Virus record (IMG/VR): IMGVR_UViG_3300036781_000418
Coordinates: 124,001-188,000 of that record
Length of the DNA stretch: 64,000 nt
Reading direction: 5' to 3' (one strand)
Every line of letters begins with the position of its first letter. Position 1 is the first letter of the stretch. The position numbers and the translations under genes are program-made. Of this stretch, positions 34,833 through 58,115 are shown piece by piece. Under the pieces are notes generated by a model. That model had not been told where the DNA came from, searched no databases, and was given only the letters and a program-made list of their open reading frames with translations.

Positions 34833-34933
34833 CGGGTTCACGTGACGGCGACACGGTTGAGGCTGAGGGCCTCCCGATCGGTGAAGGTGGTTGGCTCTGC
34901 ATCGGAACCAAACAAGTGCAACCGGTGACCCCG
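34833..34933. ncRNA. Candidate structured element, copy A (homologous to 58025-58115 in reverse orientation)
   Basis: Four colinear conserved blocks shared with copy B, with potential closing stems. No known RNA family recognised. Confidence 0.45.
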
Positions 34934-34975
34934 GGTGACGCCAGGTCTAAATACTGAAACAAGTAGAGAGCTACC

Positions 34976-35362
34976 ATGACGCCAGTAACCGCCGCCGCAA
35001 TGACGATCACCGCCTTCGGCTTCACCATCAACCTGATCTCCCTGATGATCATCCTCCTGATCATTGGCCTGGTGGTGCTCTTCATTCGCATTCAGCTCAG
35101 CAACCGTCTCGACTTCGCCGACATGCTCACGAAGGACGGTCACACCGTGTCCTTGACGAAGGTCCTACAGCTGCTTGGCGGGACGACCTCCACGTGGGTC
35201 GTGATCAAGCTCGCCTCTTCAGGTGCGCTCGGCGTCGAGATCTTCGCCACGTACCTGGCCTACGTCGCCTCCATCGAGGGGTTCAGCAAGTTCATCTCCG
35301 CGAAGTACGGCTACCGTGAGACCGGTGCCAGCGGTAAAGGCGACCCGACTAAGCCAGAATAA
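34976..35362 (+). CDS. Holin-like membrane protein
   Basis: 128 aa with several hydrophobic segments and a basic C-terminal tail. TAAATA at 34948-34953. Confidence 0.5.
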   Translation: MTPVTAAAMTITAFGFTINLISLMIILLIIGLVVLFIRIQLSNRLDFADMLTKDGHTVSLTKVLQLLGGTTSTWVVIKLASSGALGVEIFATYLAYVASIEGFSKFISAKYGYRETGASGKGDPTKPE

Positions 35363-35414
35363 CCGGGTTGCTATAAGGTTATGATGGCGATGTACTGACC
35401 ACTCAGGGATCATC

Positions 35415-35690
35415 ATGACCTCCTTCCAAGAACCAGCCCCGTTGTCGCCGTCCTACGGCGGTGAGCGGCTGGCCTCCAAGATTCTGATGGGCTCGCGTGT
35501 ACGTCGTGAAATCTTCGACCCGACGAACCTCGAGCACCTCCAGAGCTACCGCACCTACCTGACCACTGGCAACTGGGGTGACGTCCAGTTCTACTACGAA
35601 AACCCGTTCGCCACCGTGCCGGCCACCGTCAACTACAAGTTCGCGATCGCCGCCCTGAACTCGACGTTGGGCGACGGCAACGTCAACTGA
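35415..35690 (+). CDS. Hypothetical phage protein
   Basis: 91 aa, preceded by a TATGAT box. Confidence 0.6.
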   Translation: MTSFQEPAPLSPSYGGERLASKILMGSRVRREIFDPTNLEHLQSYRTYLTTGNWGDVQFYYENPFATVPATVNYKFAIAALNSTLGDGNVN

Positions 35691-35706
35691 TCCCACCCAA
35701 CCCAAA

Positions 35707-35734
35707 CAAAGGGGACGCCATTGGCGTCCCCTTT
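35707..35734 (+). terminator. Bidirectional terminator-like hairpin
   Basis: aaaggggacgcc-att-ggcgtcccctttt. Confidence 0.75.
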
Positions 35735-35749
35735 TCGTATGATGGTGAT

Positions 35750-36238
35750 ATGGAACAACTCACCACCAACCCAAACAGGATCGACCTTGACGAGGCCTAC
35801 ATGCAGATGGCCGAGATCTGGGCGAAACGCTCCAAGGCGAACCGCAAGCAGGTCGGTGCCCTGATCGTCAAGGACAAGCAGATCATCTCGGACGGCTACA
35901 ACGGCATGCCAAGTGGCGCCAGTGACGACGTCTGTGAAGTCATGGTCTACCCTGACTCATACGATGGGCGTGACGGTATCGGTGGATCACCGGACAAGCT
36001 CATGAAGACGAAGAACGAGGTCCTCCATGCCGAGTCCAACGCCCTCATGAAGGTGGCCGAGAATGGTGGTGTTGGCGTCCAAGGCGCGACCCTCTACGTG
36101 ACCATGTCGCCGTGCCGTGACTGCGCCAAGCTGATCAAGCAGGCCAAGATCGCCCGTGTGGTTTACCGTGAAGAATACCGTGACACCGGTGGCGTCGACT
36201 TCCTCCGTGAATACGGTGTGCAGGTGATCAAGCTATGA
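35750..36238 (+). CDS. dCMP deaminase
   Basis: QVGALIV, DGYNG, HAESNA and SPCRDC. Confidence 0.93.
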   Translation: MEQLTTNPNRIDLDEAYMQMAEIWAKRSKANRKQVGALIVKDKQIISDGYNGMPSGASDDVCEVMVYPDSYDGRDGIGGSPDKLMKTKNEVLHAESNALMKVAENGGVGVQGATLYVTMSPCRDCAKLIKQAKIARVVYREEYRDTGGVDFLREYGVQVIKL

Positions 36239-36807
36239 GCCTTGACACCCTTACGACTGAGCTAAACGGCCGCACCCTTCGATACGACGGCGTCAGCATC
36301 GTCAGCCCTGAAGCCGTGCCCGACCTGTTCATGAAGGGCGTCAACCCTTGCCTGCTCCGCGTGAACGTGCTGGACCCTGACATCGAGACGTTCAACCGCC
36401 TAGTGCCACTGGATCCAGTCAACGTGGTTGGACCTGAACCGATCACGTTCAACCGTGGCTGGCTTCTACCTAGGCTGACGGCGAAGCTGGACGTCCAAGC
36501 ACACGTCATGACGCTGCTCCAGGCAAAGCTGTTGACTGGGTGTTACCTCAAGCACGAGCAGGTCGATGCGGCCATGAAGCGTACCGAGGCGGAGCTGGCC
36601 CTGTTCACCAAGCATGGGATGGACGACCTGCTCCGCTGCCTCATCTGGGTGATTGAAAAGTTCAAGGAGCACAAGGTCGTGTACGGCGTCGGTCGTGGCT
36701 CGAGCTGTGCGTCGTACGTGCTCTTCCTGATTGGTCTCCACCTGGTGGATCCAATCAAGCATGAAATCCCAATTGAGGAGTTCTTCAAGCCGGCTGAGCA
36801 GCCGTGA
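36235..36807 (+). CDS. DNA polymerase III alpha (DnaE)-like N-terminal palm fragment
   Basis: EAELALF, GVGRGSSCASYVLFLIGLHLVDPIKHEIPIEEF, which is the GRGS region of DnaE. Confidence 0.85.
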   Translation: MSLDTLTTELNGRTLRYDGVSIVSPEAVPDLFMKGVNPCLLRVNVLDPDIETFNRLVPLDPVNVVGPEPITFNRGWLLPRLTAKLDVQAHVMTLLQAKLLTGCYLKHEQVDAAMKRTEAELALFTKHGMDDLLRCLIWVIEKFKEHKVVYGVGRGSSCASYVLFLIGLHLVDPIKHEIPIEEFFKPAEQP

Positions 36808-36854
36808 AAGCTAAATAGGGAAGCCCAAAACCCTATTTAACAGGAGATGCCCTT

Positions 36855-37079
36855 ATGGCAGTTATTCGCAGCGCTCGCGGTGAGCTCATCGACACCCGTC
36901 TGATGGCCATCAAGGCCCAGCTGGCGAAGGCCCCGCTTCCAAAGGCCGTTCAGGCCCGCCAAGTTGAGATCACGGAACTTGAAGGTGGCAAGGTCGAAGA
37001 GCAAGTTGTTACCGCCGAAATGATGGAGATGATGGCCGCGGCCGAAGTCTCCGATGTTAAACCCAAGAAAGCAAAGTAA
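36855..37079 (+). CDS. Hypothetical phage protein
   Basis: 74 aa. TAAATA at 36812-36817 and a CAGGAG RBS. Confidence 0.6.
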   Translation: MAVIRSARGELIDTRLMAIKAQLAKAPLPKAVQARQVEITELEGGKVEEQVVTAEMMEMMAAAEVSDVKPKKAK

Positions 37080-37408
37080 TGAGCTTCGAAAAGCTACGTC
37101 CAATTCTGAACACCGTGCTCTTCACCTTCCTCGATAAGACCGAGGGTGCAAAGGGCGCTTTCTCTGAACGCACACGTGGCGGCATTATCCTGCCAACCGT
37201 CAAGTCCACTCAGCGCGACGACCGCTGGGGTCGAGTCGAGGCGGTCGGTCCGGACGTCTACGGCCTTGAAGTAGGGGAGTTCATCCTCATCGAGGCCCTG
37301 CAGTGGAACCGTTCCGAGGTCTTTGAGGGCGACAAGCTCTGGAAGACCGATGACACCAAGATCCTCTTGGTTACGACCGACGAGAACCTCACCGTCAACT
37401 ACGGATAA
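37079..37408 (+). CDS. GroES-like co-chaperonin
   Basis: LRPILNTV, TRGGIILP, GRVEAVGPD and VGEFIL. Confidence 0.8.
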   Translation: MSFEKLRPILNTVLFTFLDKTEGAKGAFSERTRGGIILPTVKSTQRDDRWGRVEAVGPDVYGLEVGEFILIEALQWNRSEVFEGDKLWKTDDTKILLVTTDENLTVNYG

Positions 37409-37411
37409 ATC

Positions 37412-37627
37412 ATGATGAGTGCTTGTGCATGTATGGGACCAGCGGGCGACTGCCCATGTCTTCGCCGTCAACGTGGCCAGAAGGTGGAGATTACGGAGAC
37501 GTTCATCTCCCCAAGCCTCTTCGCCCTCTTGACTGACGAGGACAAGAACACCGTCAATGAGATCAAGCGGAAAGCACTTGGTCTGTGGATGGCTGAGAAA
37601 CATGCCAAGAAGGTAGTCAATGATTAA
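37412..37627 (+). CDS. Small Cys-rich hypothetical protein
   Basis: CACMGP...CPC N-terminus. Confidence 0.5.
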   Translation: MMSACACMGPAGDCPCLRRQRGQKVEITETFISPSLFALLTDEDKNTVNEIKRKALGLWMAEKHAKKVVND

Positions 37628-37931
37628 CACGGTGCTACTGTCTAAAGTCGAGGTGAAGAAGCTGTTGGCTATTCTACTTGATGAAAGCCTGACTGACGTT
37701 GCTGCTTGGAACCAAACGTACGCGATCTTTCATAGTCGAGATGTTGAGCGTGCGTACATGCATGAGAATCACCTCGTCACGCAGGAGTATCAGGAAAATG
37801 TCAATGCGGACGATGTTCGCTGGTCGCTGTTTGACTCTGAACTTGGTGGGCAGGTGGACTTTCCTAATCGCACCGAGATGATCGGTGAATTGGCAATATA
37901 CGAATACCTACTTCGGAAGGCGAAACCATGA
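37620..37931 (+). CDS. Hypothetical protein
   Basis: 103 aa in an overlapping run. Confidence 0.5.
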   Translation: MINTVLLSKVEVKKLLAILLDESLTDVAAWNQTYAIFHSRDVERAYMHENHLVTQEYQENVNADDVRWSLFDSELGGQVDFPNRTEMIGELAIYEYLLRKAKP

Positions 37932-38191
37932 TCATCAGCAGCGAAGGCCTCACCTTCTCCTATGAGCGTGACGGCAGGTACTGGGTGCTGCACATTGACA
38001 AGAGCCCAACCCCATTGAGGTGGGACCCTAGCGCGACGTTCACGCCCAAATCGCTCGATCTTCCAGTGCTACGTGCTGAGTATCGGCGCGCCATCGGCGC
38101 CATCATTGACGACATGTTTTCGTACCTGTCGTTCAATGATCGCCACGAAATTTTCAACCTAACCATCAAGCACATCCCTTGTCCTTTCTAA
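37928..38191 (+). CDS. Hypothetical protein
   Basis: 87 aa with an ATGA overlap. Confidence 0.5.
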   Translation: MIISSEGLTFSYERDGRYWVLHIDKSPTPLRWDPSATFTPKSLDLPVLRAEYRRAIGAIIDDMFSYLSFNDRHEIFNLTIKHIPCPF

Positions 38192-38209
38192 CTTTGTGAG
38201 TTTACATGC

Positions 38210-39307
38210 ATGACCTTTATCATCCTTACCTTCCTAGCGGCCTTTCTCATTGAAGGACTAGGAACCGCCACCTCGGTCATTGGTCTCAGTGCGCTCTTCG
38301 GCGCCAACCCAATCATCATCGCGCTGGCCATCGCCCTCGACTTGGGCAAGATCGTCGTGGTCTCCCTGTTGTACAAGTACTGGAGCACCCTGGGCAAGGT
38401 GATGAAGTCGTACGCGTTCATCGCGGCCGCGATCACCATGGTCATCACGTCCGCTGGGGCCGCGGGCTACCTGACTGGCGAGTTCCAGAAGGCCATCATG
38501 GGCTCACAGGAAAGTGGGCTGCGTGTTGAGGCGCTGAAGGGCGAGCAGGCCAAGCTGGAAGAGCGCAAGAAGCAGATCGACAACCAGATCGAGCACCTGC
38601 CCGAGAAGTACACGGCGACCGCTCGGATCCGCATGATCAACCAGTTCAAGGACGAGCAGAAGACGGTGACGGCGCGGCTTGGTGAGATCACCACGCAGCT
38701 GCCCGACCTACAGGTTCACCAGCTGGGTGTGGAGGCGAAGGCTGGACCGATCCTGACCATCGCCAAGTCGTTCAACATCCCAGTCGAGCAGGCGATCAAG
38801 TACGTCATCCTCATGATCATCGTGGTGTTCGACCCGTTGGCGATCTTCTTGATCATCGCCGGCAACTTCTTGGTGGAACAGCGGAAGAAAGGTCAACAGG
38901 CGGAATACATCGAGCGTATCAAGGATGAGGTGCGCACGAAACGTATACCTGTCATGACGCCACCGCCACCGCCACCGCCTGAGAAAGAGACACCCGAGCC
39001 AACCGATGAGACCACAGCGGTGATGGAGGAAGCGCCCGTCATGCCGATCTACGAGGTCTTGGAGCCGACTCCACAGCCACTTGAGGAGCCACCAGAACCG
39101 CCTGAGGTGAAACCAGCCGACCCCAATGAGATCACCCTCAACGACCTCGGTCCAAGGGCCGAGATCACGCTTGACACCGTGAAGGGTAAGCTGCACCGCT
39201 CCTCAATGCACGACGCTGACGAGGGCGACGTGGAGATGGACGTTGGGGTTGGGCTGCACGGCAAACCTTCGCGTGCTCGTACCGTGTACCAAGGCCAGAG
39301 ACGATGA
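38210..39307 (+). CDS. Multi-TM membrane protein with coiled coil and Pro/Glu-rich tail
   Basis: Three N-terminal TM segments, a coiled coil, a further TM segment (IIVVFDPLAIFL) and a poly-Pro tail. Confidence 0.7.
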   Translation: MTFIILTFLAAFLIEGLGTATSVIGLSALFGANPIIIALAIALDLGKIVVVSLLYKYWSTLGKVMKSYAFIAAAITMVITSAGAAGYLTGEFQKAIMGSQESGLRVEALKGEQAKLEERKKQIDNQIEHLPEKYTATARIRMINQFKDEQKTVTARLGEITTQLPDLQVHQLGVEAKAGPILTIAKSFNIPVEQAIKYVILMIIVVFDPLAIFLIIAGNFLVEQRKKGQQAEYIERIKDEVRTKRIPVMTPPPPPPPEKETPEPTDETTAVMEEAPVMPIYEVLEPTPQPLEEPPEPPEVKPADPNEITLNDLGPRAEITLDTVKGKLHRSSMHDADEGDVEMDVGVGLHGKPSRARTVYQGQRR

Positions 39308-39358
39308 CAGGTTCGATGTTCGCTACAATGAAAGTATCGACATCGAAAAGGAGCCTTC

Positions 39359-40276
39359 ATGGCCGTCAACACGCTTTGGGTAGATCGCTACAAACCAAAG
39401 ACCCTCGCTGACCTCGTTCTCCAAAACGAAAGCGTCCGCAAGATCTTCGCCAAGTACATCGAGGAGAAGAGCATTCCCAACCTGCTCTTGGTTGGGCCAG
39501 CTGGTACGGGCAAGAGCTCAATGTCCAACGTCCTCAAGCGTGAGCTTGAGATCGACCGCCTTGACACGTTGCGCATCAACTGCTCGGATGAAGGCATCGA
39601 GGCGATTCGCGACAAGGTCAAGTCCTTCGCCACGACCCTGCCGTACGGTGACTTCAAGCTTGTCCAGCTTGAGGAGATTGACGGCCTCGGCCACCAAGCC
39701 CAGAAGATGCTGCGCAGCTTCATGGAGGACGTGACCCACACGTGTCGGTTCATCGCCACGGCGAACAACAAGAACCTGCTCCTCCCAGCCATCCAGTCGC
39801 GGTTCCAGACCTTCGAGTTCCAAGCTCCGGGCCGTGACTTCGTCATGCTCCGTGGTGCGGAGATCATGGAGAAGGAGGAGATCGCCTTCGACCTTGACAC
39901 CATCGAGCGGTTGGCCGCCATCACCTACCCCGACGTTCGCCAGTTCATCCAGCAGCTGGAGAAGAACTCGACGTCAGGCGCGTTGAAGATCGTCGCGGCT
40001 GAAGCCTCAGCCCAAGACTGGAAGCTCAGCCTGCTTGACCTGATGGGAACCAGCAACTGGGCCGCCGCACGAAAGCTCGTGTGTGAGAACTCCAGCAAGG
40101 AGGAGCTCGTCGACGTCTACCGCTTCCTCTACCAGAACATCCACCGCACTGACGTGTCTCAGGCGAAGCGTGACTTGGCGGTCGTCGTCATTGCCAAGTA
40201 TCAGTACCAACATCCATTCTGTGCCGACGGGGAACTCAACCTCGCGGCCTGCTTCATTGAACTGGGGATTTTGTAA
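39359..40276 (+). CDS. Clamp loader AAA+ subunit, T4 gp44-like
   Basis: WVDRYKPKTL, GPAGTGKS, LEEID and IQSRF. Confidence 0.92.
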   Translation: MAVNTLWVDRYKPKTLADLVLQNESVRKIFAKYIEEKSIPNLLLVGPAGTGKSSMSNVLKRELEIDRLDTLRINCSDEGIEAIRDKVKSFATTLPYGDFKLVQLEEIDGLGHQAQKMLRSFMEDVTHTCRFIATANNKNLLLPAIQSRFQTFEFQAPGRDFVMLRGAEIMEKEEIAFDLDTIERLAAITYPDVRQFIQQLEKNSTSGALKIVAAEASAQDWKLSLLDLMGTSNWAAARKLVCENSSKEELVDVYRFLYQNIHRTDVSQAKRDLAVVVIAKYQYQHPFCADGELNLAACFIELGIL

Positions 40277-40632
40277 TGGCCGATACCGCAGACCGTCGCT
40301 CAGAGGGCGACCTTTCAATGACTGACAGTGCAATACAGAATCGGCTCACCTACCGACACTGTCAAGCTCATGGCATCTGCGTGAGCTGCAAAACCAAGGA
40401 GGTGCGAGGCCGTTCGTACTGCTACGACTGCTCAATCACGCAGAAGCTCCACACCTACCGGACGGGGTTGAGGCACTTCATGACCGACGCCGGGCTAGAC
40501 AACACAACGAACGTCCTCAACGTGGTTGAGGGCATGATTGATCGGCACCAGCTGTCGCTGGATGAAATGGTGCTGCTCAATTCACTCCTGGTGCTCATCA
40601 GCAAAGCACACACTACAAGGAAAACAACATGA
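40276..40632 (+). CDS. Hypothetical Zn-finger-like protein
   Basis: CVSC ... CYDC. Confidence 0.45.
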   Translation: MADTADRRSEGDLSMTDSAIQNRLTYRHCQAHGICVSCKTKEVRGRSYCYDCSITQKLHTYRTGLRHFMTDAGLDNTTNVLNVVEGMIDRHQLSLDEMVLLNSLLVLISKAHTTRKTT

Positions 40633-41159
40633 TCATCACCCTCTGCGGCTCCGCCCGCTTCGAACGTCTCTTCAAGGCCTGGAACGAGGCCCTCACCCTC
40701 GGTGGCCACACCGTCTTCGACCTATCAGTCTATCCGAGCGAGAAGGCGGGCGTCAAGCAGTGGTACAACGACGTCGAGAAGATCCAGCTCGATGCGGCCC
40801 ACCTCGCCAAGATCGCCGCCTCAGACGCGATCGTCGTCATCAACCGCTACGGCTACATCGGTGAGTCCACCCTGCGTGAGGTGATGTTCGCCAAAGCCGC
40901 CGGCAAAAAGCTCTACTTCCAAGAAGGCTGGATGCAAGGCTATGGCTTCGACCCAGATGCCGAACGACGTGTTCAAGATGGCGACATCGTCGACGAGTTC
41001 GAGGCCTCAGCCATCAAGGACGGCATCGCCCTCCCCGTTAAGTCGCCCATCAACACGGGTTGGTACTCCACCGACGTCACAGGCGACACGTTGCTTGAAA
41101 GTTGTGACCAAGATGGCATCTACTGGAAGCGCGTCTCCGACGCCATAAACGCGGAGTAA
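40629..41159 (+). CDS. Rossmannoid (nucleoside-deoxyribosyltransferase-like) hypothetical protein
   Basis: ITLCGSARF ... HLAKIAASDAIVVIN..GYIGEST.REV.FA...GK. Confidence 0.5.
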   Translation: MIITLCGSARFERLFKAWNEALTLGGHTVFDLSVYPSEKAGVKQWYNDVEKIQLDAAHLAKIAASDAIVVINRYGYIGESTLREVMFAKAAGKKLYFQEGWMQGYGFDPDAERRVQDGDIVDEFEASAIKDGIALPVKSPINTGWYSTDVTGDTLLESCDQDGIYWKRVSDAINAE

Positions 41160-41161
41160 CC

Positions 41162-43224: not shown

Positions 43225-43303
43225 CCCGGCACCGTTACACCTTCGTCGTTATCCGGTCTCGTAACGGTGTATAATCGGACGTACACACTTACACGAGGGA
43301 CGT

Positions 43304-47296: not shown

Positions 47297-47297
47297 C

Positions 47298-47708: not shown

Positions 47709-47726
47709 CGTACCCTGGTGCGGTGA

Positions 47727-47769: not shown

Positions 47770-47784
47770 AACCGTTTACACACC

Positions 47785-49152: not shown

Positions 49153-49162
49153 GGAGTTTGAC

Positions 49163-49333: not shown

Positions 49334-49466
49334 CACAGAACCTGCGCAAGCTCGGCGACACCAGGGATGACCGGTGTCGCCGATTCGTTTGTGGTGGTAT
49401 GATCAACACCTACGCCGAACGGTTGCAACCGACGACCGCCTGGCACCAACGACCATACAAGAAGAC

Positions 49467-51060: not shown

Positions 51061-51869
51061 ACCTCAATTGAAGCCGTTCCGTCGTAGCGGTGGTACTTTA
51101 GATCCACTTCAAAGTGGTAGCCACCTGGGTTGCACAGCACCTGCGTGCGGTACAGCTGTCGGTTGATCGTGTCATGGGTGTGACCGAAGATCCAGTAAGC
51201 GGGCGCGTTGTCGTCCATCATCATCAGACCGCAGTCGGAGGCGAAGCCGCCGTTCATGGAGCTGCCGTGACGCGGGTGGCACAGTGAATGGGACGGCACG
51301 TGGTGGGTCACCACGATCGTCTTGCCGTCGTGCTTCGACGCAAGGGCCAGGCCGATTCGTTCACGGTTTACCTTGTTCATCTCGAACATGTCGCCGGCCG
51401 TGAATAGTTGGGCCGAGTGAACGTCACCGATCGTGATCTCACGGAAGTCCCACATGCCGTTCTGCACTACCAGGGTCTCCAATGGGTTTGAACCGCCGTC
51501 GGCCCAGAGCACGGACATGATGAAACGCACATCGTCGATGTAGACCGTCTTCACGCCCTTGACGACGTACGTGACGTTCGTCAGGGTAGTCCAGGCCGGA
51601 CCCATGATGGCCGCCTCGTACTCGTTCATGTTGTAGCCGTAGAACTCGTGGTTTCCAGCGACCATCAGGACGTGCTTGAAACGCTTCGACAGGACTTCCA
51701 AGACGACCTGCAAGTAGTTGCGCTTGGCGCAGATGTCACCAGCCAGTACCAGGACGGTTGCCTCGTCACCGAGGAGCGTCGGGATGTGGTCCTCAACTAG
51801 GTCGGCGACGGAGCGCTTTTGGCCCACCTTGAACTCAAGGTGGAGGTCGGAGACGTATCGAATCTTCAT
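51057..51869 (-). CDS. Calcineurin-like metallophosphoesterase
   Basis: SDLH, AGDI, AGNHE, VVTHH and WIFGHTH. Confidence 0.92.
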   Translation of the reverse strand: MKIRYVSDLHLEFKVGQKRSVADLVEDHIPTLLGDEATVLVLAGDICAKRNYLQVVLEVLSKRFKHVLMVAGNHEFYGYNMNEYEAAIMGPAWTTLTNVTYVVKGVKTVYIDDVRFIMSVLWADGGSNPLETLVVQNGMWDFREITIGDVHSAQLFTAGDMFEMNKVNRERIGLALASKHDGKTIVVTHHVPSHSLCHPRHGSSMNGGFASDCGLMMMDDNAPAYWIFGHTHDTINRQLYRTQVLCNPGGYHFEVDLKYHRYDGTASIEV

Positions 51870-52039
51870 GATGCTTTCTTGAGCTCGAGCTGGAGTTCCA
51901 TCCAACACTTAAGCTTCTGCTTTAGTTCTACAACGACACCCGGCTTGCTGAGCGCACCTTGGATCGCCGCGAGCTGGAGCTCGGCGATCAGGGCTTCGCG
52001 TCTCGCCACGTACTGGGCGAACAAGTAGATGTTACTCAT
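51866..52039 (-). CDS. Small helical protein (57 aa, below the ORF-track cutoff)
   Basis: MSNIYLFAQYVARREALIAELQL...; downstream of a minus-strand TAAATA (52045-52050) and overlapping the next start (ATGA). Confidence 0.55.
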   Translation of the reverse strand: MSNIYLFAQYVARREALIAELQLAAIQGALSKPGVVVELKQKLKCWMELQLELKKAS

Positions 52040-52157
52040 GCGTATATTTACCCATTTTGGTGGGTTGTGAGTCCCAAATTGAGGTACATGGGTATGAACC
52101 CAACTTGCTACAATTCAAGCTGTTGTTCCACCAAGTCGTGCTCACGCACACCCACTT

Positions 52158-52433
52158 ATGCAAAAGCGTTTTCAAGATCACACCTCCAGCGTGGCGTTGT
52201 ACGCCGTCCTTAACGAGGACGGGACGTACTTCGCGGGGTTTGACCCACTTAAAGGTGAGGCTGTCAAGGTCGTAGACCCACTGAGAGCCAAGCTGTTCAC
52301 CAACAAGTTCAAAGCGTCTCTTCGTCCAGGGGAGCAGCTGGTGGAGCTGCTCGTCACGCTGTCCTTAGACAACACCCACGTCTCCAAACCCTTCCGCCCA
52401 AAGCGTCGGACCGATCCAACTACAACGGAGTAA
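52158..52433 (+). CDS. Hypothetical phage protein
   Basis: 91 aa. Confidence 0.55.
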   Translation: MQKRFQDHTSSVALYAVLNEDGTYFAGFDPLKGEAVKVVDPLRAKLFTNKFKASLRPGEQLVELLVTLSLDNTHVSKPFRPKRRTDPTTTE

Positions 52434-52436
52434 TCC

Positions 52437-52832
52437 ATGTCAAGATACCGTAACGACAACAGTGCCGGCGTTGCTATCCTCGCGGTGCTGTTTATCATCC
52501 TCGCCTTCTGTGGCGTCGTCGGTGCCATTGGCACCGCGATCTACTTCCAGTTCTCAACGATCATGCATGGGGTGCTGGCCCTAACCAACTGGGTGCCAAC
52601 GATGGGGGTCAAGACCGGAATCTTCGTCGGCACCTGCCTCATCATGTTGTACTTCCGAGCGTTGTACACGTTCGGTGGCATGGCGCTGGGTTGGTTCGTG
52701 TTGGGCATGTCCTGGTGGCAACCGCCGTTGATCTTCTTCCCGTTCATCGCCTTCGCCCTCTTCGGTACGTCGCTTCTCGCGGCCGTCACGCTGCTGGGTT
52801 CGGTGGTCGTTGACTTTTTCGATCGGAGATAA
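52437..52832 (+). CDS. Multi-TM membrane protein
   Basis: About four hydrophobic segments. Confidence 0.65.
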   Translation: MSRYRNDNSAGVAILAVLFIILAFCGVVGAIGTAIYFQFSTIMHGVLALTNWVPTMGVKTGIFVGTCLIMLYFRALYTFGGMALGWFVLGMSWWQPPLIFFPFIAFALFGTSLLAAVTLLGSVVVDFFDRR

Positions 52833-52835
52833 TTC

Positions 52836-54173
52836 ATGTCACGTAAGCTAGTTTCAGTCCGCACCATCGACGCGCTGCGCCCGATTCCCGGTGCGGACGC
52901 CATCGAGGTCGCAACCATCGGCGGCTGGGAGCTCGTGGTGAAGCGTGGCGAGTTCGAAGTGGGGGTCCCATGCCTGTACTTCGAGATCGACTCATTCCTA
53001 CCCAAGCACGTTCCGGCCTTCAGCTTCCTAATGACTCGTGGACTGCGCACCTTTGAGGGCGTCGAAGGCCACAAGCTGAAGACGATCCGCCTGCGTGGTC
53101 AGCGTTCGCAAGGCCTGGCCCTGCCGCTTACCATGTTCGCCTTCATGGAGCCGCTGCTCCGCGGTGTCCAAACAACGGACGAGGAGCTGGCCAACTACTG
53201 GCTGCCCGCCGAGAAGATTCCAATGTGGCGGGAGTACTTCTTCGGCATGCACGAGTACGAGGCCGCCCTGGCTCCACAGGACTTTGACTGGGCGCCGATG
53301 TTCGACGTGGTGAAGTGGGAAGTTGAACTGCCCGCCAGCTTGAAGGGTCAGGCCAAGGGCACGTTCCCGTCGTTCATCCGCAAGACGGACCAAGAGCGCT
53401 GCCAGAACATGAAGCAGGAGATCTTCGGTTCCCCTGACGAGACGTACGTGTTTGACGTCTCCACGCTGCCACAGGAGGCGATCGACGCGATGCTCCAGAA
53501 GGGTCACCTCCAAGTGATCAACGGCATCTACCACCGCATCGTGTCGGGGTTGGCTGGCCAAGATCCTGACACCGTGTACGAAGTCACGTTGAAGGTGGAC
53601 GGTTCGTCGTTCACCGCCTACGTCAAGGCCGACGACGATGGCAACGTGGTCACGGGTGTCTGCAGTCGGAACCTTGAGCTGAAGGTGAACGACGAGAACA
53701 AGGACAACGCGTTCGTCAAGATGTTCGTGGAGAGCGGTCTCCAGGCCGCGATGATCGAGATGTACAACAACCCAAACAACCACATTCCGGACGGTCGCCC
53801 ATTCGCGTTTGCGGTGCAGGGTGAGTTGATGGGGCCTGGCATTCAGAGCAACCGTGAAGGCTTCACGGAGAACAAGCTGTTCGTGTTCGACATCTTCGAC
53901 ATCAACCAAGGGTTCTACATGCCGCCGATGTTCCGACACGACGTCGTAGAGGAGCTGCAGAAGTTGGGCGCCAAGCTTGAACACGTGCCGATTCTCGACG
54001 CTTGCGCAAAGCTGTCCGACCTCGGGCTGCACGACATCGCGTCGATCTTGGCCTTCGCCAATGGCCCCAGCATCAACAACCCGGTTCGGGAAGGCGTCGT
54101 CTTCAAGCGCATGGACGGTCAGTTCAGCTTCAAGGCGATCAGCAACCTGTACCTGGAAATGGAGAAGGACTGA
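52836..54173 (+). CDS. ATP-dependent RNA ligase (DRB0094/Rnl5-like)
   Basis: N-terminal IPGADAIE..GGW..VV..YFEIDS; KTDQER, TLKVDGSS (motif I), CSRN, QGEL.GPGIQ.N, FVFDI, REGVVFK and SFKAISN. Confidence 0.92.
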   Translation: MSRKLVSVRTIDALRPIPGADAIEVATIGGWELVVKRGEFEVGVPCLYFEIDSFLPKHVPAFSFLMTRGLRTFEGVEGHKLKTIRLRGQRSQGLALPLTMFAFMEPLLRGVQTTDEELANYWLPAEKIPMWREYFFGMHEYEAALAPQDFDWAPMFDVVKWEVELPASLKGQAKGTFPSFIRKTDQERCQNMKQEIFGSPDETYVFDVSTLPQEAIDAMLQKGHLQVINGIYHRIVSGLAGQDPDTVYEVTLKVDGSSFTAYVKADDDGNVVTGVCSRNLELKVNDENKDNAFVKMFVESGLQAAMIEMYNNPNNHIPDGRPFAFAVQGELMGPGIQSNREGFTENKLFVFDIFDINQGFYMPPMFRHDVVEELQKLGAKLEHVPILDACAKLSDLGLHDIASILAFANGPSINNPVREGVVFKRMDGQFSFKAISNLYLEMEKD

Positions 54174-54313
54174 TGGAACCGAACAAGATGCTCGTTGAGC
54201 TCTTCGGCGGCATTATGGTCAGGCTCGCGATCGTCGCGGCGATCGGTGCCGTGTCCACGTTTGCCTGGATTATCTACGGCCTAGTGCACCTCATCAGGTA
54301 CATCGTGACCTGA
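54173..54313 (+). CDS. Small membrane peptide
   Basis: 46 aa, hydrophobic, overlapping the ligase stop. Confidence 0.45.
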   Translation: MEPNKMLVELFGGIMVRLAIVAAIGAVSTFAWIIYGLVHLIRYIVT

Positions 54314-54328
54314 ACCTAAAACCATTGG

Positions 54329-54368
54329 TGTACACAGCGGGTGAGGTCGTTAAAATGACCTCACCCGC
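54329..54368 (+). promoter_or_regulatory. Sigma70-like promoter with the -10 box in the loop of a 12-bp inverted repeat
   Basis: TGTACA-N16-TAAAAT; arms gcgggtgaggtc (54337-54348) and gacctcacccgc (54357-54368). Confidence 0.6.
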
Positions 54369-54407
54369 ACATGTATGCGGATGGCGTGTAACTTTGAAGG
54401 GAATTCT

Positions 54408-55061
54408 ATGTGGGACAAACTCAAGGGTTTGGTCATTGAGTCGGATCCGGCCCCCGCCGCGTCCGCACCTCAAGTGGCCGCACCTGGAAAACCGTTGGTG
54501 ACACCAATGGGCAGCACTCCGATCACGTTCACTCCGCCTGGTGTGAACATGGACTTCGTCAACGCGATCAAGAAGGCGATCTTCAGCCGGCCGAGCGCGT
54601 ACCTCACGCTCCTGGAGGCGTCCACGAAGTTGGAGGCCTTCATCGCGGATCCGAACATGCGGATGAAAGCCGCGTGGCAGACTTCGGGTGGTGGTCGCTC
54701 CGCACAGGAAGTCGTGAACGCGGTCACCGCCCACTTGGCGGACGTGGACGGTGAAGAACGCAAGTTCAACGTCGCCGTACAGAACCAGATTCAGACGGCC
54801 GTCGGCACGTTGGTCAACCAAGCCGCCACGCTGCGACAGGACAATGACAACTGCCGCAAGCAGGTCGAACAGCTGACACAGCAGATCACCCAGCTCAACG
54901 ACCGCGTCACGCAACAAGACACGATGGCCTTGCAGCTCGACGGTCAAATCACCGACTCGCGCGCGAAGCTGGATCAGTCCTCCAACGAGTTCAAGGTCGC
55001 CGCACAGGTCGTGCGTGACGAGCTCTCCGCCCACCGCACCACCATCACCTCCACCCTTTAA
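54408..55061 (+). CDS. Coiled-coil protein
   Basis: Pro/Ala linker, small helical domain and a long Gln-rich heptad C-terminus. Confidence 0.75.
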   Translation: MWDKLKGLVIESDPAPAASAPQVAAPGKPLVTPMGSTPITFTPPGVNMDFVNAIKKAIFSRPSAYLTLLEASTKLEAFIADPNMRMKAAWQTSGGGRSAQEVVNAVTAHLADVDGEERKFNVAVQNQIQTAVGTLVNQAATLRQDNDNCRKQVEQLTQQITQLNDRVTQQDTMALQLDGQITDSRAKLDQSSNEFKVAAQVVRDELSAHRTTITSTL

Positions 55062-55070
55062 GGTACCACC

Positions 55071-56090
55071 ATGTCGAATGAACTGACAACGCAACAAGCG
55101 AAGTCCTTCTGGGCTCGCCCAGAAGGCAAGACGGGTATGCTCGCCATCGCGGGCGGTGGCGTCGGCCTCTGGCTCGCCGGCCCCTTCCTCATCGGCCTCT
55201 TCGCGACGGCCATCACCCTCGTCGGCCAGGCGATCACGCTGACGATTCTCGGCGCGATCCTCTTCGCGCTGTGGATGATCTTGTCGAACAAGAAGTTCCA
55301 GACGCTGGTCTCCTACTTCTTCAAGTCCGCGATGCGCTCCCTCACCGGTGTGATCGTGGAGATCGATCCGATCGGCATCATGAAGTCGTACGTCGAGGAC
55401 ATGAAGAAGAAGCGCGACGTCATCTCCGAGGCGCGCGACAAGCTCAACGGCCAGGTGAAGAACCTCGAGCAGAAGATTCGCGACAACGACAGTGGTCGTG
55501 AAAACGCGATGGCCAAGGCGAAGGTTGCACAGGAAAAGGGCATGGGCGCCGCGCTTCAAGTGCAGGCCCGCCAAGCTGGCCGCCTGGAAAAGCTGAACGA
55601 AGGCAGCTTCAAGCCGATGCTCGCCAAGATGAACGCGCACAAGAAGGCGTTGGACAAGTACTACGAGGTCACGGGCATCGTGATCGAGGACTTGCAGAAC
55701 GAAGTTGAGATGCGCGAGATCCAGCGCAAGACCATCTTGGCCTCGTACTCCGCGATGAAGGCGGCTTCCGCGATCATCAACGGCGGCACGAACGAGAAGG
55801 AGCTCTTCGACCAAGCCACTGAGTTCGTCGCGATGGACTACGCCGCGAAGCTGGGTGAGATCGAGTCCTTCATCGAGAACTCGCAAGGCTTCGTCGACGG
55901 CATCGACATCGAGAACGGCGTCTACGAGGCGTCCGCCCTCAAGAACCTCGAGCTGTGGGAAGGTTCCGACTCCATCCTGCTCGGTCATGGCAAAGCGGCG
56001 CTGGTTCAAGCTGACCTGAGCGTCTCGCCGCTGACCACCAAGATCGGCAACGACTCGCTGGACTACGCAACGCTGCTGTCCCGCAAATAA
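55071..56090 (+). CDS. Membrane-anchored coiled-coil protein (PspA/IM30-like tendency)
   Basis: Two N-terminal TM segments followed by about 250 aa of heptad-rich helices. Confidence 0.7.
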   Translation: MSNELTTQQAKSFWARPEGKTGMLAIAGGGVGLWLAGPFLIGLFATAITLVGQAITLTILGAILFALWMILSNKKFQTLVSYFFKSAMRSLTGVIVEIDPIGIMKSYVEDMKKKRDVISEARDKLNGQVKNLEQKIRDNDSGRENAMAKAKVAQEKGMGAALQVQARQAGRLEKLNEGSFKPMLAKMNAHKKALDKYYEVTGIVIEDLQNEVEMREIQRKTILASYSAMKAASAIINGGTNEKELFDQATEFVAMDYAAKLGEIESFIENSQGFVDGIDIENGVYEASALKNLELWEGSDSILLGHGKAALVQADLSVSPLTTKIGNDSLDYATLLSRK

Positions 56091-56191
56091 GTATGGTCCC
56101 TGGCAGCCGCTCCTTGGCTGCCAGCATAGAATGACCTACGCCTCTGAGCGTGTATTAGCGTGTTCAACACTTCAAACCTGAGGGTTTAATC

Positions 56192-57934
56192 ATGGGAAAA
56201 CTGAAGACACTCCCCAAAGCCATCATCGGACTTATCGTCATCGGTGGTGTCGCTTTCGGAGTCAACACCGCCATCAACAAAGGCTACTTCAAGCAGAAAA
56301 CTGAAGTGGCCGTCCAGGTGCCGGACAAGATCGACGGCCTTGGTGGTGGCATCACCTCCACCGCACCGAAACCGACCGCAACCACAGCCATCAACGTGAT
56401 GGCCGCCACAACGGGTGAGACCCTCCGCGTGAAGACCATTCCGTGGAACGGCACGCTTGGCCTGATGCACGCCCAAGCGTCCGGCGCCTTCCGTGCCCAC
56501 AACCTCAACGTGGACATCAAGCGTGAAGACGACTACTCCAAGATGATCGCCGACATGGCGGCCTTCGCGAAGGATCCGACGCAAGGTGTTCACTTCACGG
56601 TGATCATGGGTGACGGCCTGCCGGCCTACATCATCGGCCTGAACGAGGCGCTCAAGCCCTTCGGTCAGCAGGCTGAAATGATCGCGGGTATCGGCTACTC
56701 GCGTGGTGAGGACAAGTGCGTGATCGCGGACGAGGCCAACCCTCGCGGTGCCCTGATCGCCGGCGTCCTTGGTGACGGCGACATCAACATCTGCATCAAG
56801 TACGCCGCGGACAACGCCATCCCGATCAACGCCAACCCGAAGACCTACGACCCCGACGCCATGAACTTCATGGGCACCGGCTCGTTCGTTGAAGCGGACG
56901 AGAAGTTCATCTCCTCGGCCCGCAACAACTACAAGGGTGGTGCGTGTGAAGAGCGCAAGAACACGAAGACCGGTGACAAGCAGACGGTCTGTGTCACGGG
57001 CTCGGCCACCTGGACTCCCGGTGACGTGAAGGACTTCAGCGAGCTGAAGAAGCTTGGCAAGTCGCTTCGTGTGATCGGCTCTACCAAGGAGTACGCATGG
57101 CAGATGCCAGCCGCGATCATCGGCAACAAGACGTGGATGGCCAACAACCGCCCGACGGTCGAAGCCTTCCTCGCCTCCATCCTTGAATCCGGTGAGAAGG
57201 TCCGCGGTGACAACCAAGCGCTGATGGTCGCCTCCGCCGAACAGGCCAAGGTGATCGGTGAGCAGGACGCTAGCTACTGGGCTGAAATGTTCAAGGGCAC
57301 GACGGACGTTAGCCCCAACGGCAAGACGATTCAGCTTGGTGGCTCCACCACCAACGGTCTCTCGGACGCGGCCTTCATGTTCGGCTTGAACGGAGCGGAC
57401 GACCTCTACTCCAAGGTGTACAACGTGTACGGCAAGATCTCGGTGAAGTACTTCCCCGACCTCATGCCCGGCGGTCTCCGCCCATACGGCGACGTCGTAA
57501 ACAAGTCGTTCATCCAAGCGTTGCTCGCCAAGGCCACCAACGTCGCGCAGGTCGACAAGCCGGTTTACTCCAGCACGACGACTGAAACCTTCGCGGCCAA
57601 GTCGTACGCCATCGAGTTCGAAACCGGCAAGGCCACCTTCTCGCCCTCCGCGGTCAAGGTGCTGAACGACCTGTTGGATCAAGCCGCCGTGACGACGCTG
57701 AACGTGCAGATCAACGGCCACACGGACAACACTGGTGATTCTGGCACGAACATCGGGCTGTCCAAGGACCGAGCCGAAGCGGTGAAGAACTTCCTGATGA
57801 AGAACGCACCGTCCACCTTCACGGCCGAACGTGTCCAAACGCGCGGCTACGGTGACACGCAACCGATCGCGGACAACAACACCGTCGCGGGCAAGGCCAA
57901 GAACCGCCGCGTTGAGGTTATCCTCCGCAAGTAA
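56192..57934 (+). CDS. ABC-type substrate-binding domain fused to a C-terminal OmpA/MotB peptidoglycan-binding domain
   Basis: N-terminal TM anchor and an NMT1/THI5-like body (YSRGEDK, TWTPGD); C-terminal FETGKA, INGHTDNTG, NIGLSKDRAEAV, RGYG and NRRVE. Confidence 0.88.
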   Translation: MGKLKTLPKAIIGLIVIGGVAFGVNTAINKGYFKQKTEVAVQVPDKIDGLGGGITSTAPKPTATTAINVMAATTGETLRVKTIPWNGTLGLMHAQASGAFRAHNLNVDIKREDDYSKMIADMAAFAKDPTQGVHFTVIMGDGLPAYIIGLNEALKPFGQQAEMIAGIGYSRGEDKCVIADEANPRGALIAGVLGDGDINICIKYAADNAIPINANPKTYDPDAMNFMGTGSFVEADEKFISSARNNYKGGACEERKNTKTGDKQTVCVTGSATWTPGDVKDFSELKKLGKSLRVIGSTKEYAWQMPAAIIGNKTWMANNRPTVEAFLASILESGEKVRGDNQALMVASAEQAKVIGEQDASYWAEMFKGTTDVSPNGKTIQLGGSTTNGLSDAAFMFGLNGADDLYSKVYNVYGKISVKYFPDLMPGGLRPYGDVVNKSFIQALLAKATNVAQVDKPVYSSTTTETFAAKSYAIEFETGKATFSPSAVKVLNDLLDQAAVTTLNVQINGHTDNTGDSGTNIGLSKDRAEAVKNFLMKNAPSTFTAERVQTRGYGDTQPIADNNTVAGKAKNRRVEVILRK

Positions 57935-57977
57935 AAGTTACACGCTATGGTCGGGTTCCCTCCCTGACCATCTTTAT

Positions 57978-58006
57978 AGGACGAGTCGAAAGGCTCGTCC
58001 TTTTTT
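57978..58006 (+). terminator. Rho-independent terminator
   Basis: aggacgagtc-gaaa-ggctcgtcct followed by T6. Confidence 0.85.
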
Positions 58007-58024
58007 GACTCGTGAGCACCACCA

Positions 58025-58115
58025 GACGGCGACCGGTTGCACCCGAATATACGATGCACAGAGCACAACACCGTAGCCGGCCAGTGCCTCAGACGTCGCC
58101 TCGTGTCGCCGAACG
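58025..58115. ncRNA. Candidate structured element, copy B
   Basis: Reverse-complement homolog of 34833-34933. cggcgac and gtcgccg can close the domain. Confidence 0.45.

What the first reader, a model, noticed from the sequence alone, without database searches (positions are those of the whole stretch)
34833..58115. Unexplained roughly 90-nt intergenic element present twice (34846-34926 on +, 58032-58111 on -)
Seen in sequence: two gene-free gaps 23 kb apart share four colinear blocks in opposite orientation. The blocks are CGGCGACACG, CTGAGG, TGCATCG and GTGCAACCGGT, with spacers of 7/29/11 nt in copy A and 9/28/9 nt in copy B. A partly conserved GGTGnTnnGCTC lies just before the third block. 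The intervening sequence differs, but each copy can form a closing stem (A: cgggttcac/gtgaccccg; B: cggcgac/gtcgccg) and a TGCA...TGCA inner hairpin. The blocks are not conserved in any shared reading frame. Both copies sit between a terminator and a promoter. I could not match the element to tRNA, tmRNA, SRP, RNase P, common riboswitches or the known small ribozymes. A related CGGCGACAC arm also occurs in the hairpin at 49352-49383. Inference: a novel phage structured ncRNA or ribozyme, or a small mobile or protein-binding DNA element.
Basis: seen in the sequence. Interest (0 to 1): 0.7.

Follow-up and report, generated by a model that had tools for sequence, protein, structure and literature searches.

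The report
Eroded copies of phage terminator cassette
The two look-alike gaps are worn-down members of a family of about two dozen ~95-bp palindromic intergenic cassettes in a soil T4-like jumbo phage; the intact form looks like a two-way transcription terminator, not a new ribozyme or structured RNA.

Summary
The four blocks are real and non-random. But they are not a two-copy element. The window is part of a 342.6-kb T4-like jumbo phage (Gp23 capsid protein, gp55-like late sigma). It carries at least 23 related intergenic elements, four of them in this window.

Intact copies are about 98 bp. They have inverted end boxes (CGGCGACACGAGG... / ...CCTCGTGTCGCCG) around a GC hairpin (GAGGGACC-N4-GGTCCCTC). 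The hairpin has A-rich and U-rich flanks and scores as an intrinsic terminator on both strands. These copies lie directly after stop codons, often between convergent genes.

Copies A and B fold no better than shuffled sequence. Each already has a canonical terminator just upstream. Relatives lack the element at both orthologous sites. The family shows no consensus RNA structure, no compensatory changes in the closing stem, and no Rfam match.

My best reading is a PeSL/REP-like terminator and recombination cassette family, with A and B as decayed members.

Nine cassettes are joined, exactly 5 nt away, to a conserved 33-bp box. That box occurs 9-11 times per genome at unusually even ~30-kb spacing in several related phages. 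It remains unexplained.

The parts
34754..34783 (+). Canonical intrinsic terminator of the upstream gene (34327-34755, RNA-ligase-like). It lies upstream of copy A.
   Evidence: Terminator scan; phrog_755 match for the gene.
34788..34840 (+). P box. The invariant 33-mer (TAGAGGCATTAGCTGGCAGATAGTGCGGGTTCA) is at 34808-34840, with about 20 nt of weaker upstream conservation. It is joined to copy A by a 5-nt spacer.
   Evidence: 11 copies in the genome, 9 of them exact; 9 are followed by the CGGCGACACG box, after 5 nt in at least 8 of them. The core is conserved in related phages.
34846..34942 (+). Copy A: an eroded cassette. It keeps the left end box CGGCGACACG, a relic of the hairpin's 5' arm (CTGAGGGCC), the tail motif GGTGGTTGGCTCTGCATCG, and the inner part of the right end box (GTGCAACCGGTGACC).
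   Evidence: nhmmer matches; family alignment; fold z = +1.26 and -0.13.
34946..34954 (+). TCTAAATAC, a match to the phage's enriched upstream motif (C/G)TAAATAG (a likely T4-type late promoter). It lies 22 nt before the ATG at 34976.
   Evidence: 8-mer enrichment upstream of genes; sequence.
57978..58007 (+). Canonical intrinsic terminator of the upstream gene (56192-57934). It lies upstream of copy B.
   Evidence: Terminator scan.
58020..58111 (-). Copy B: an eroded cassette in the opposite orientation. Its left end box (CGGCGACACGAGGCGACG) is well kept. The hairpin is lost. It keeps the tail motif GGTGTTGTGCTCTGTGCATCG and a degenerate right end box (GTGCAACCGGTCGCCG).
   Evidence: nhmmer matches; fold z = -0.93 and -0.71; absent at the orthologous site in L072 and G003.
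58137..58165 (+). Sigma-70-like promoter (TTCACA-17-TATGAT) upstream of the gene at 58195-58974.
   Evidence: Promoter scan, 10 of 12 matches.
49353..49436 (+). Third family copy in the window. It has a perfect end-box hairpin (CGGCGACAC...GGTGTCGCCG), the tail motif, and GGTTGCAACCGACGACC. It starts 19 nt after the upstream gene's stop codon.
   Evidence: nhmmer E 5.5e-8; alignment; z = -4.4; context.
21773..21860 (+). Fourth family copy in the window. Its end boxes are diverged but its hairpin (CGAGGGACC-TTCG-GGTCCCTC) is intact. It starts 3 nt after the upstream gene's stop codon.
   Evidence: nhmmer E 1.7e-10; alignment; context.

Best explanation
Copies A and B are two decayed members of a dispersed family of about 95-bp intergenic palindromic cassettes in a soil T4-like jumbo phage. 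The family has at least 23 members.

The intact cassette is a bidirectional intrinsic terminator. It has a GC hairpin (GAGGGACC-N4-GGTCCCTC) with an A-rich tract on one side and a U-rich tract on the other, so it reads as a terminator on either strand. An inverted 11-22-bp end box (CGGCGACACGAGGCGACGCCGG) extends it on both sides. It sits directly after stop codons and, in its most complete form, between convergent genes.

Inferred function:
- It ends and insulates transcription units.
- It leaves a stable 3' structure on the mRNA.
- Its 20-100 bp of conserved sequence gives the phage's recombination system homology. That lets cassettes spread, convert and be lost, as proposed for PeSL cassettes of T4-type phages.

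Where a separate canonical terminator already serves the upstream gene, as at A and B, the cassette hairpin has eroded.

Shown: family membership, architecture, position, lack of RNA-structure signal, and lineage-specific presence.
Inferred: termination activity, spread by recombination, and any role of the end boxes.
For: **Family membership.** A profile built from other copies finds A and B. There are 23 loci.

- Block 1 is the left end box.
- CTGAGG is the 5' arm of the hairpin (C[G/T]GAGGG).
- GGTGnTnnGCTC plus TGCATCG is the U-rich tail (TCTGTTGTGCTCTGTGC).
- GTGCAACCGGT is the inner part of the right end box.

**Terminator behaviour.**
- The intact copies at genome 306014 and 123589 score as terminators on both strands, and the copy at 278080 on one strand.
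- Intact copies fold at z = -4.5 to -6.5.

**Position.** 10 of 24 intergenic boxes start within 9 nt of a gene-model stop codon on the same strand. An eleventh (genome 37999) follows an in-frame-looking TAA by 9 nt but has no gene call there. At 10675, 10762 and 278080 the stop codon overlaps the box.

**Decay at A and B.** Both have their own upstream terminators and no fold signal.

**Orthologous sites.**
- B is missing in L072 and G003.
- A is replaced in G003 and L074 by a simple hairpin terminator.
- The 306014 site in G003 keeps the same hairpin with A-rich and U-rich flanks but has no end boxes.

**Phage type.** It is T4-like: Gp23 at E 2e-86 and a gp55-like sigma at E 9e-30. This is the group in which composite repeated promoter/terminator cassettes are documented (PMC2839356, PMC4122927).
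Against: - There are no transcript data. The only RNA run found holds nothing on this region.
- The U-tracts are imperfect (5 T in 8).
- The terminator model does not explain why the 17-22-nt end box is conserved letter for letter across phages that share only about 50% protein identity.
- It does not explain why one arm is joined at exactly 5 nt to the P box.
- PeSLs carry a clear sigma-70 promoter. The P box does not match one.
- Spread by recombination is inferred only from presence or absence and from copy-number differences.
Confidence: 0.55

Rival explanations
1. The conserved end box (CGGCGACACGAGGCGACGCCGG, with two GGCGAC repeats one helical turn apart) is a DNA site for a phage-encoded protein. 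It could be an operator or roadblock, working like the stoperators of mycobacteriophage L5, or an accessory site of the P box. On this reading the hairpin and the rest of the cassette are secondary.
For: - The box is conserved as sequence on both arms, with almost no compensatory change.
- The exact 17-mer is kept in at least five other phage lineages.
- The spacing to the P box is fixed: 5 nt here and 8 nt in G001.
- Boxes occur alone, without a partner arm, after stop codons.
- It is not a host repeat: there was one chance hit, inside a coding region, among 185,579 bacterial and archaeal genomes.
Against: - No candidate binding protein was identified.
- Three related jumbo phages keep only 1-3 boxes, which is odd for a core regulatory site.
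- The boxes in copy A (right arm) and copy B (right arm) are degenerate.
Confidence: 0.2
2. The cassette is a MITE-like non-autonomous mobile element of the Correia/IS630 type. It has terminal inverted repeats and inserts at TA, and it is moved by a transposase supplied in trans.
For: - Size about 98 bp, with 11-22-bp terminal inverted repeats.
- TA follows the right end in about 8 of 16 aligned copies, and flanks both ends at 10675-10770.
- Copy number differs strongly between relatives.
- Orthologous sites are empty.
Against: - TA on both sides occurs in only 1 of 5 complete copies, read directly.
- Internal sequence is poorly conserved while the ends are.
- The phage has no Y1 (IS200/RAYT) or DDE_3 (IS630) transposase.
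- The element is absent from bacterial genomes.
- The hairpin core is present at an orthologous site in G003 without the end boxes. This suggests the cassette grew around an older terminator rather than being inserted whole.
Confidence: 0.12
3. The P box is a promoter, and P-linked cassettes are small RNA genes or 5' leaders. The family would then be a set of phage sRNAs whose CGGCGACACGA 5' region pairs with the complementary TCGTGTCGCCG in other cassettes and 3' UTRs. The reader's structured RNA idea falls here.
For: - The P box always points into the cassette at fixed distance.
- In 6 of 11 cases it faces a convergent gene, with the cassette hairpin in between, as expected for a self-contained small transcription unit.
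- In relatives the P core has -35/-10-like hexamers (TTAACA-16-TAGTGT) (by eye).
- G001 has ORF-free arrays of P boxes about 100-250 nt apart.
Against: - No consensus structure or covariation.
- A and B are unstructured.
- No Rfam match.
- 14 of 23 cassettes, including copy B, have no P box.
- The P box here does not pass a sigma-70 scan, and no phage RNA polymerase was found.
- P orientation relative to co-directional genes is about 15 the same and 7 opposite. One orthologous P box is inverted in G003.
Confidence: 0.1

Closest known systems
PeSL (promoter-early stem-loop) cassettes of T4-type phages (PMC2839356, PMC4122927)
   Same: Both occur in T4-like phages and are repeated about 100-bp intergenic composite motifs. 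Both contain a GC stem-loop that acts as a terminator or attenuator. Both are conserved enough to serve as recombination linkers, and both are linked to insertions and deletions between relatives.
   Different: PeSLs carry a clear sigma-70 early promoter with an AT-rich upstream region. Here the linked P box does not match sigma-70, and 14 of 23 cassettes have none. These cassettes have long inverted end boxes and work-alike symmetry on both strands. Mini-circle or shuffling activity was not tested.
REP/BIME extragenic palindromes of enterobacteria (from general knowledge)
   Same: Both are short GC-rich palindromic units found only between genes and right after stop codons, often between convergent genes and in either orientation. 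Both come in tens of copies. REP/BIME units are thought to stabilise 3' ends, attenuate transcription and bind proteins.
   Different: REPs are about 35-40 nt units with a GTAG-type head and are spread by RAYT (Y1) transposases. No Y1 transposase is present here. This unit is about 98 bp with a separate central terminator hairpin. It lives in a phage, and there is no counterpart in bacterial genomes.
Bidirectional intrinsic (Rho-independent) terminators
   Same: A GC hairpin has an A-rich tract on one side and a T-rich tract on the other, between convergent genes, and it scores on both strands.
   Different: Ordinary terminators share structure, not sequence. Here the hairpin sequence, the tails and the 11-22-bp outer boxes are all conserved among copies and between phages.
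Correia elements / MITEs with TA duplication (from general knowledge)
   Same: Both are about 100-150 bp with terminal inverted repeats. Both are intergenic and affect transcription and RNA processing.
   Different: There is no consistent TA duplication, no transposase partner and a poorly conserved interior.
Stoperators of cluster A mycobacteriophages (from general knowledge)
   Same: A short asymmetric site is repeated about 20-30 times in short intergenic spaces next to stop or start codons.
   Different: Stoperators are 13-bp sites of a known immunity repressor in temperate phages. No binder is known here and this phage is T4-like.
Halovirus HF2 intergenic repeats that carry promoters (PMC8707807, abstract seen)
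   Same: A virus genome carries classes of conserved intergenic repeats tied to transcription signals.
   Different: That is an archaeal virus with AT-rich promoter motifs, no palindromic terminator core and no sequence relation.

Membership tests
Any Rfam RNA family (riboswitch, ribozyme, sRNA, tRNA-like) | Covariance-model score at or above the family's gathering threshold | tested here: not met
   There were no hits in the whole window at gathering. In E-value mode only sub-threshold terminator-like hits appeared, beside the element. ARAGORN found nothing.
Structured ncRNA / self-cleaving ribozyme (generic) | A shared secondary structure supported by compensatory base changes and by folding better than shuffled sequence | tested here: not met
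   RNAalifold predicted 0 pairs over 16 copies. The named stems were 68.7% paired against 64.2% in shuffles, and 8 of the 11 closing-stem pairs show no compensatory change while 3 show a single one each. A and B fold at z = +1.26 to -0.93.
Structured ncRNA / self-cleaving ribozyme (generic) | Catalytic self-cleavage or a discrete transcript | not testable with these tools
   No usable RNA data.
Intrinsic bidirectional terminator | A GC-rich stem-loop followed by a T-rich tail on both strands, placed after gene ends | tested here: met
   Met for the intact copies at genome 306014 and 123589 on both strands, and for 278080 on one strand. Not met for copies A and B themselves, where the only terminator found lies upstream of each.
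Intrinsic bidirectional terminator | Measured termination of transcription | not testable with these tools
   Needs Term-seq or a reporter assay.
PeSL cassette | Host phage belongs to the T4-type group | tested here: met
   Gp23 PF07068 at E 2e-86 and the gp55-like late sigma phrog_234 at E 9e-30.
PeSL cassette | A repeated intergenic motif of about 100 bp that holds a stable stem-loop | tested here: met
   23 loci. Intact copies fold at z = -4.5 to -6.5.
PeSL cassette | A strong sigma-70-like early promoter (-35, -10, AT-rich upstream) inside the motif | tested here: not met
   No sigma-70-type site lies in or next to the P box or cassette. 14 of 23 cassettes have no P box.
PeSL cassette | Association with insertions, deletions or shuffling between related phages | tested here: inconclusive
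   The element is absent at the orthologous A and B sites, and copy numbers are 24, at least 13, 1, 3 and 2 among relatives. These relatives share only about 50-74% protein identity, so single events cannot be traced.
MITE (IS630/Correia type) | Terminal inverted repeats | tested here: met
   CGGCGACACGA...TCGTGTCGCCG in complete copies.
MITE (IS630/Correia type) | Target-site duplication (TA) on both sides | tested here: not met
   TA is on both sides in only 1 of 5 complete copies (read).
MITE (IS630/Correia type) | A cognate transposase with matching ends | tested here: not met
   No DDE_3 or Y1_Tnp in the phage. There was one chance hit of the box in 185,579 bacterial and archaeal genomes. 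Other transposase families were not searched.
REP/BIME | An associated RAYT (Y1) transposase and about 35-nt REP units | tested here: not met
   No Y1_Tnp. The unit is about 98 bp with a distinct central hairpin.
T7/SP6-type single-subunit RNA polymerase promoter (for the P box) | A phage-encoded single-subunit RNA polymerase | tested here: inconclusive
   PF00940 was not found, but the control genomes do not carry it either. No multisubunit RNAP domains were found. The 2918-aa giant protein is a virion structural protein with no polymerase match.

The most novel reading that the evidence does not exclude
The 33-bp P box, together with the CGGCGACACG box fixed 5 nt beside it, may be a cis-acting DNA site system rather than an mRNA promoter or terminator. 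Possible roles are replication-origin or primer-promoter sites of the T4 oriF/oriG kind, or loading or topology sites.

Supporting points:
- It occurs 9-11 times per roughly 335-kb genome.
- It sits at unusually even ~30-kb intervals.
- It is kept at partly orthologous positions in several soil T4-like jumbo phages.
- It is tolerated in either orientation.

The cassettes of the finding would then be its accessory protein-binding arms.
Probability: 0.15. Interest if true: 0.75.

Novelty: new variant of a known kind. Interest (0 to 1): 0.4.

Why it matters
The result removes a candidate novel ribozyme or ncRNA and replaces it with a concrete, testable anatomy. This is a phage-borne, sequence-conserved, two-way terminator cassette family that has expanded in some soil T4-like jumbo phages and not in others.

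Such cassettes are useful landmarks for annotating transcription units in uncultivated jumbo phages. They may also be the linkers through which these phages swap genes. They extend the PeSL idea to a GC-rich lineage that uses different sequence logic.

The side observation may be the more valuable lead. A conserved 33-bp box spaced evenly about every 30 kb in several genomes points to an unknown genome-wide cis function.

Tried and rejected
- **Rfam and ARAGORN:** nothing.
- **T7/SP6-like promoter reading of the P box.** It resembles ATTTAGGTGACACTATAG by eye, but no phage RNA polymerase was found. The giant 2918-aa protein is structural.
- **P box as the coding end of a small protein (…ALADR stop).** The open frames upstream are only 6-30 codons, so I rejected this.
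- **Sigma-54 and ECF readings of the P box.** The spacing does not fit (by eye).
- **Host REP or MITE origin.** The 21-mer box gave one chance hit, in a coding region, among 185,579 bacterial and archaeal genomes.
- **Transposases.** Y1_Tnp and DDE_3 are absent.
- **Transcriptome evidence.** One rhizosphere metatranscriptome holds 5% of the capsid-gene words but nothing on 32500-37500. The DNA source run only shows unitig breaks at the repeat.
- **The exact P 29-mer** is in no other viral contig. The motif strings are not in the literature library in any relevant paper.
- **INPHARED phage collection:** no close relative.
- **Not run:** a covariance model, because the profile-HMM search already recovered the family and RNAalifold gave no structure to model. 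Structure prediction, protein searches and complex prediction were not relevant.

Full report
**Setting**

The window is bases 124001-188000 of a 342,591-bp virus record with direct terminal repeats. The source is a soil metagenome.

The phage is T4-like:
- It has a Gp23-type major capsid protein (PF07068, E 2e-86), which lies inside the window at about 7826-8926.
- It has a gp55-type late sigma factor (phrog_234, E 9e-30).
- No single-subunit or multisubunit RNA polymerase domains were found. The phage presumably uses the host enzyme.
- The motif (C/G)TAAATAG(G) is strongly enriched just upstream of genes. It looks like this lineage's version of the T4 late promoter.

**Checking the observation**

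- CGGCGACACG occurs twice in the window, against 0.34 expected.
- GTGCAACCGGT occurs twice, against 0.03 expected.

So the similarity is real.

The element is not a two-copy feature. CGGCGACACG occurs 23 times in the genome. GGCGACACG occurs 30 times, 24 of them in the 12.6% of the genome that is non-coding, against 7.4 expected overall.

A profile built from four other copies recovers copy A (E 3.7e-6) and copy B (E 7.5e-5). Iteration gives 23 loci. Four are in the window:
- copy A
- copy B
- 21773-21860

**Anatomy of the intact cassette**

The best-kept copies are about 98 bp. They lie at genome 10675, 123589, 278080 and 306014. Read on one strand, they consist of:
1. an end box, CGGCGACACGA, followed by AAYGAAC
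2. a GC hairpin, GAGGGACC-N4-GGTCCCTC
3. a T-rich tail, TCTGTTGTGCTCTGTGC
4. about 20 variable nt
5. (G)TGCAACCGGCGTCGCCTCGTGTCGCCG, whose last 11 nt are the inverse of the first box

On the other strand the same hairpin is followed by GTTCATTTCG. The consensus scan calls the hairpin a terminator on both strands at genome 306014 and 123589, and on one strand at 278080. These copies fold far better than shuffles, at z = -4.5 to -6.5.

The cassettes lie directly after stop codons:
- 10 of 24 intergenic boxes start within 9 nt of a gene-model stop codon on the same strand. An eleventh (genome 37999) follows a TAA by 9 nt but has no gene call there.
- In three cases the stop codon TAG overlaps the box.
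- The four most complete copies fill the gap between convergent genes. Two of those genes are tail-fibre genes on the minority strand.

**What A and B are**

- Block 1 is the left end box.
- CTGAGG is the remnant of the hairpin's 5' arm (C[G/T]GAGGG).
- GGTGnTnnGCTC and TGCATCG are the T-rich tail.
- GTGCAACCGGT is the inner part of the right end box.

In both copies the 3' arm of the hairpin is gone and the outer right box is degenerate. Neither strand of either copy folds better than dinucleotide shuffles (z = +1.26 and -0.13 for A; -0.93 and -0.71 for B). Across the family, z runs from about -6.5 to +0.6, and A and B are at the unstructured end.

Both already have a canonical terminator between the upstream stop codon and the cassette, at 34754-34773 and 57978-58001. 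Selection on the cassette's own hairpin would therefore be relaxed.

**RNA-structure hypothesis**

- There is no Rfam match.
- RNAalifold predicts no consensus pairs over 16 copies.
- For the closing stem plus hairpin that I named, 68.7% of cells pair, against 64.2% after shuffling.
- The closing stem is intact in only about 6-8 of 16 copies. Eight of its 11 pairs show no compensatory change and three show a single one each.
- The hairpin varies in sequence as unrelated terminators do.

Both arms are conserved as sequence rather than as pairing. That points away from a structured RNA.

**Comparison with relatives**

The exact 17-mer CGGCGACACGAGGCGAC occurs in several other soil viral contigs. 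It usually sits a few nt after a stop codon and 30-50 nt before a terminator hairpin.

Copy number differs sharply between genomes:

| Genome | Size | Copies |
|---|---|---|
| This phage | 342.6 kb | 24 intergenic |
| G001 (fragment) | 161 kb | at least 13 |
| G002 | 336 kb | 1 |
| G003 | 332 kb | 3 |
| G004 | 235 kb | 2 |

G003 shares 187 of 420 predicted genes with this phage, at a median 50% protein identity.

At orthologous sites:
- **Copy B site.** L072, whose downstream gene is 74% identical, goes from the terminator straight to the promoter region. It lacks about 125-140 nt, including the element. G003 has no element there either.
- **Copy A site.** G003 and L074/L075 keep a P box, followed at once by a simple terminator hairpin and a CCTAAATA motif. 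They have no CGGCGACACG cassette.
- **Site of genome 306014.** G003 keeps the identical hairpin AGAGGGACCCTAGGGTCCCTC, with A-rich and T-rich flanks but without the end boxes.

The terminator core is therefore older. The boxed cassette is a lineage-specific elaboration that has been gained or lost site by site.

There is no evidence for classical transposition:
- No Y1 or DDE_3 transposase was found in the phage.
- The box is absent from bacterial genomes apart from one chance coding hit.
- TA flanks both ends in only one of five complete copies.

**Mechanism I commit to**

The intact cassette is a two-way intrinsic terminator and insulator with conserved flanks. It spreads and decays through homologous recombination, much as proposed for the PeSL cassettes of T4-type phages (PMC2839356, PMC4122927). 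A and B are relics.

- Shown: membership, architecture, placement, lack of RNA-structure signal, and presence or absence in relatives.
- Inferred: actual termination, the recombination route, and any function of the end boxes.

The weak point is the end box. Its letter-for-letter conservation between distant phages, and its two GGCGAC repeats one helical turn apart, would suit a protein-binding site. I keep that as the main rival.

**The P box**

Nine cassettes, including copy A, are joined to a 33-mer, TAGAGGCATTAGCTGRCAGATAGTGCGGGTTCA.
- Nine of its 11 genomic copies are exact.
- In at least 8 of the 9 linked copies it ends exactly 5 nt before the CGGCGACACG box.
- Its 18-nt core, GCATTAGNYGRCRRATAG, is conserved in at least a dozen soil phage contigs.
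- It is not coding.
- It does not pass a sigma-70 scan.
- Its orientation relative to co-directional flanking genes is mixed, about 15 the same and 7 opposite.
- At one orthologous site it is inverted in G003.

Its spacing is unusually even:

| Genome | P-box copies | Spacing | CV | p against random placement |
|---|---|---|---|---|
| This phage | 11 | 17.7-43.7 kb | 0.27 | about 1e-4 |
| G003 | 11 | | 0.25 | about 2e-5 |
| G002 | 9 | | 0.30 | about 1e-3 |
| G001 | 5 clusters | 27-43 kb | | |

About half of the sites are orthologous between this phage and G003. The genomes are therefore not independent tests. I could not explain this pattern. It is the most interesting loose end.

**Verdict**

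The ncRNA/ribozyme reading is not supported. The "small mobile or protein-binding DNA element" reading is nearer to the evidence. The best description is a new, GC-rich, palindromic variant of the repeated terminator cassettes known from T4-type phages, with A and B as eroded copies.

Noticed in passing
window 34808-34840 (+); genome 9015, 50501, 75500, 101917, 123692, 158808, 202554, 234590, 278182, 305976, 323678: A 33-bp P box has 11 copies (9 exact) spaced very evenly along the genome (17.7-43.7 kb apart, CV 0.27, p about 1e-4). The same holds for its core in relatives G003 (CV 0.25), G002 (CV 0.30) and G004, and for clusters in G001. About half the sites are orthologous between this phage and G003. 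Orientation relative to genes is mixed. Function unknown.
   Followed up: partly
G003 112337-112355 (-) versus genome 202554-202586 (+): At an orthologous intergenic site between the same two co-directional genes, the P box is inverted in the relative. This suggests the box works in either orientation or sits on a small segment that can flip.
   Followed up: partly
L028 (-) about 1100-3100; L031, L032, L033 (relative G001, IMGVR_UViG_3300035182_000826): ORF-free arrays hold 4-9 P boxes about 100-250 nt apart. Some are followed by the long CGGCGACACG hairpin. Others are followed by tandem 9- or 13-nt repeats (TGGATTCAA / TGGATTCTTCCAA) and a GAGGTGATCA stretch complementary to the 16S rRNA 3' end. 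There are 23 P boxes in 161 kb.
   Followed up: partly
genome-wide; e.g. window 34946-34954: (C/G)TAAATAG(G) is the most enriched 8-mer family upstream of genes (for example CTAAATAG in 21 upstream regions out of 32 genomic occurrences). It is probably this lineage's gp55-dependent late promoter.
   Followed up: partly
genome 113344-113826 (+), outside the window (L030:1351-1833): A 160-aa gp55-like late sigma factor (phrog_234, E 9e-30). It lies at the switch from the minus-strand gene block (about 52-113 kb) to the plus-strand block.
   Followed up: yes
genome 66671-75427 (-), outside the window (L103): A giant 2918-aa ORF matches a virion structural protein (phrog_10938, E 2e-63) and Ig-like decoration domains. 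It has no Pfam hit and no polymerase signal. A P box lies 72 nt upstream of its start, pointing away from it.
   Followed up: partly
genome 278230-281076 (-) and 306113-308458 (-), outside the window: Two tail-fibre genes (long tail fibre distal-subunit-like) lie on the minority strand. Each ends against one of the most complete cassettes.
   Followed up: partly
window 34671-34855: In the source metagenome run, assembler unitigs break at the P box and the cassette start. Summed word depth jumps from about 32 to 333, as expected for a multi-copy repeat. One loose end matches a P box followed by different sequence, as in contig IMGVR_UViG_3300036781_000182.
   Followed up: no
window 58137-58165 (+) and L072 about 3940-3990: A sigma-70-like promoter (TTCACA-17-TATGAT) lies upstream of the gene at 58195. 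The stretch TTGrCsGATCGTTAT is conserved in the relative. The phage therefore also uses ordinary host-type promoters, unlike the P box.
   Followed up: no
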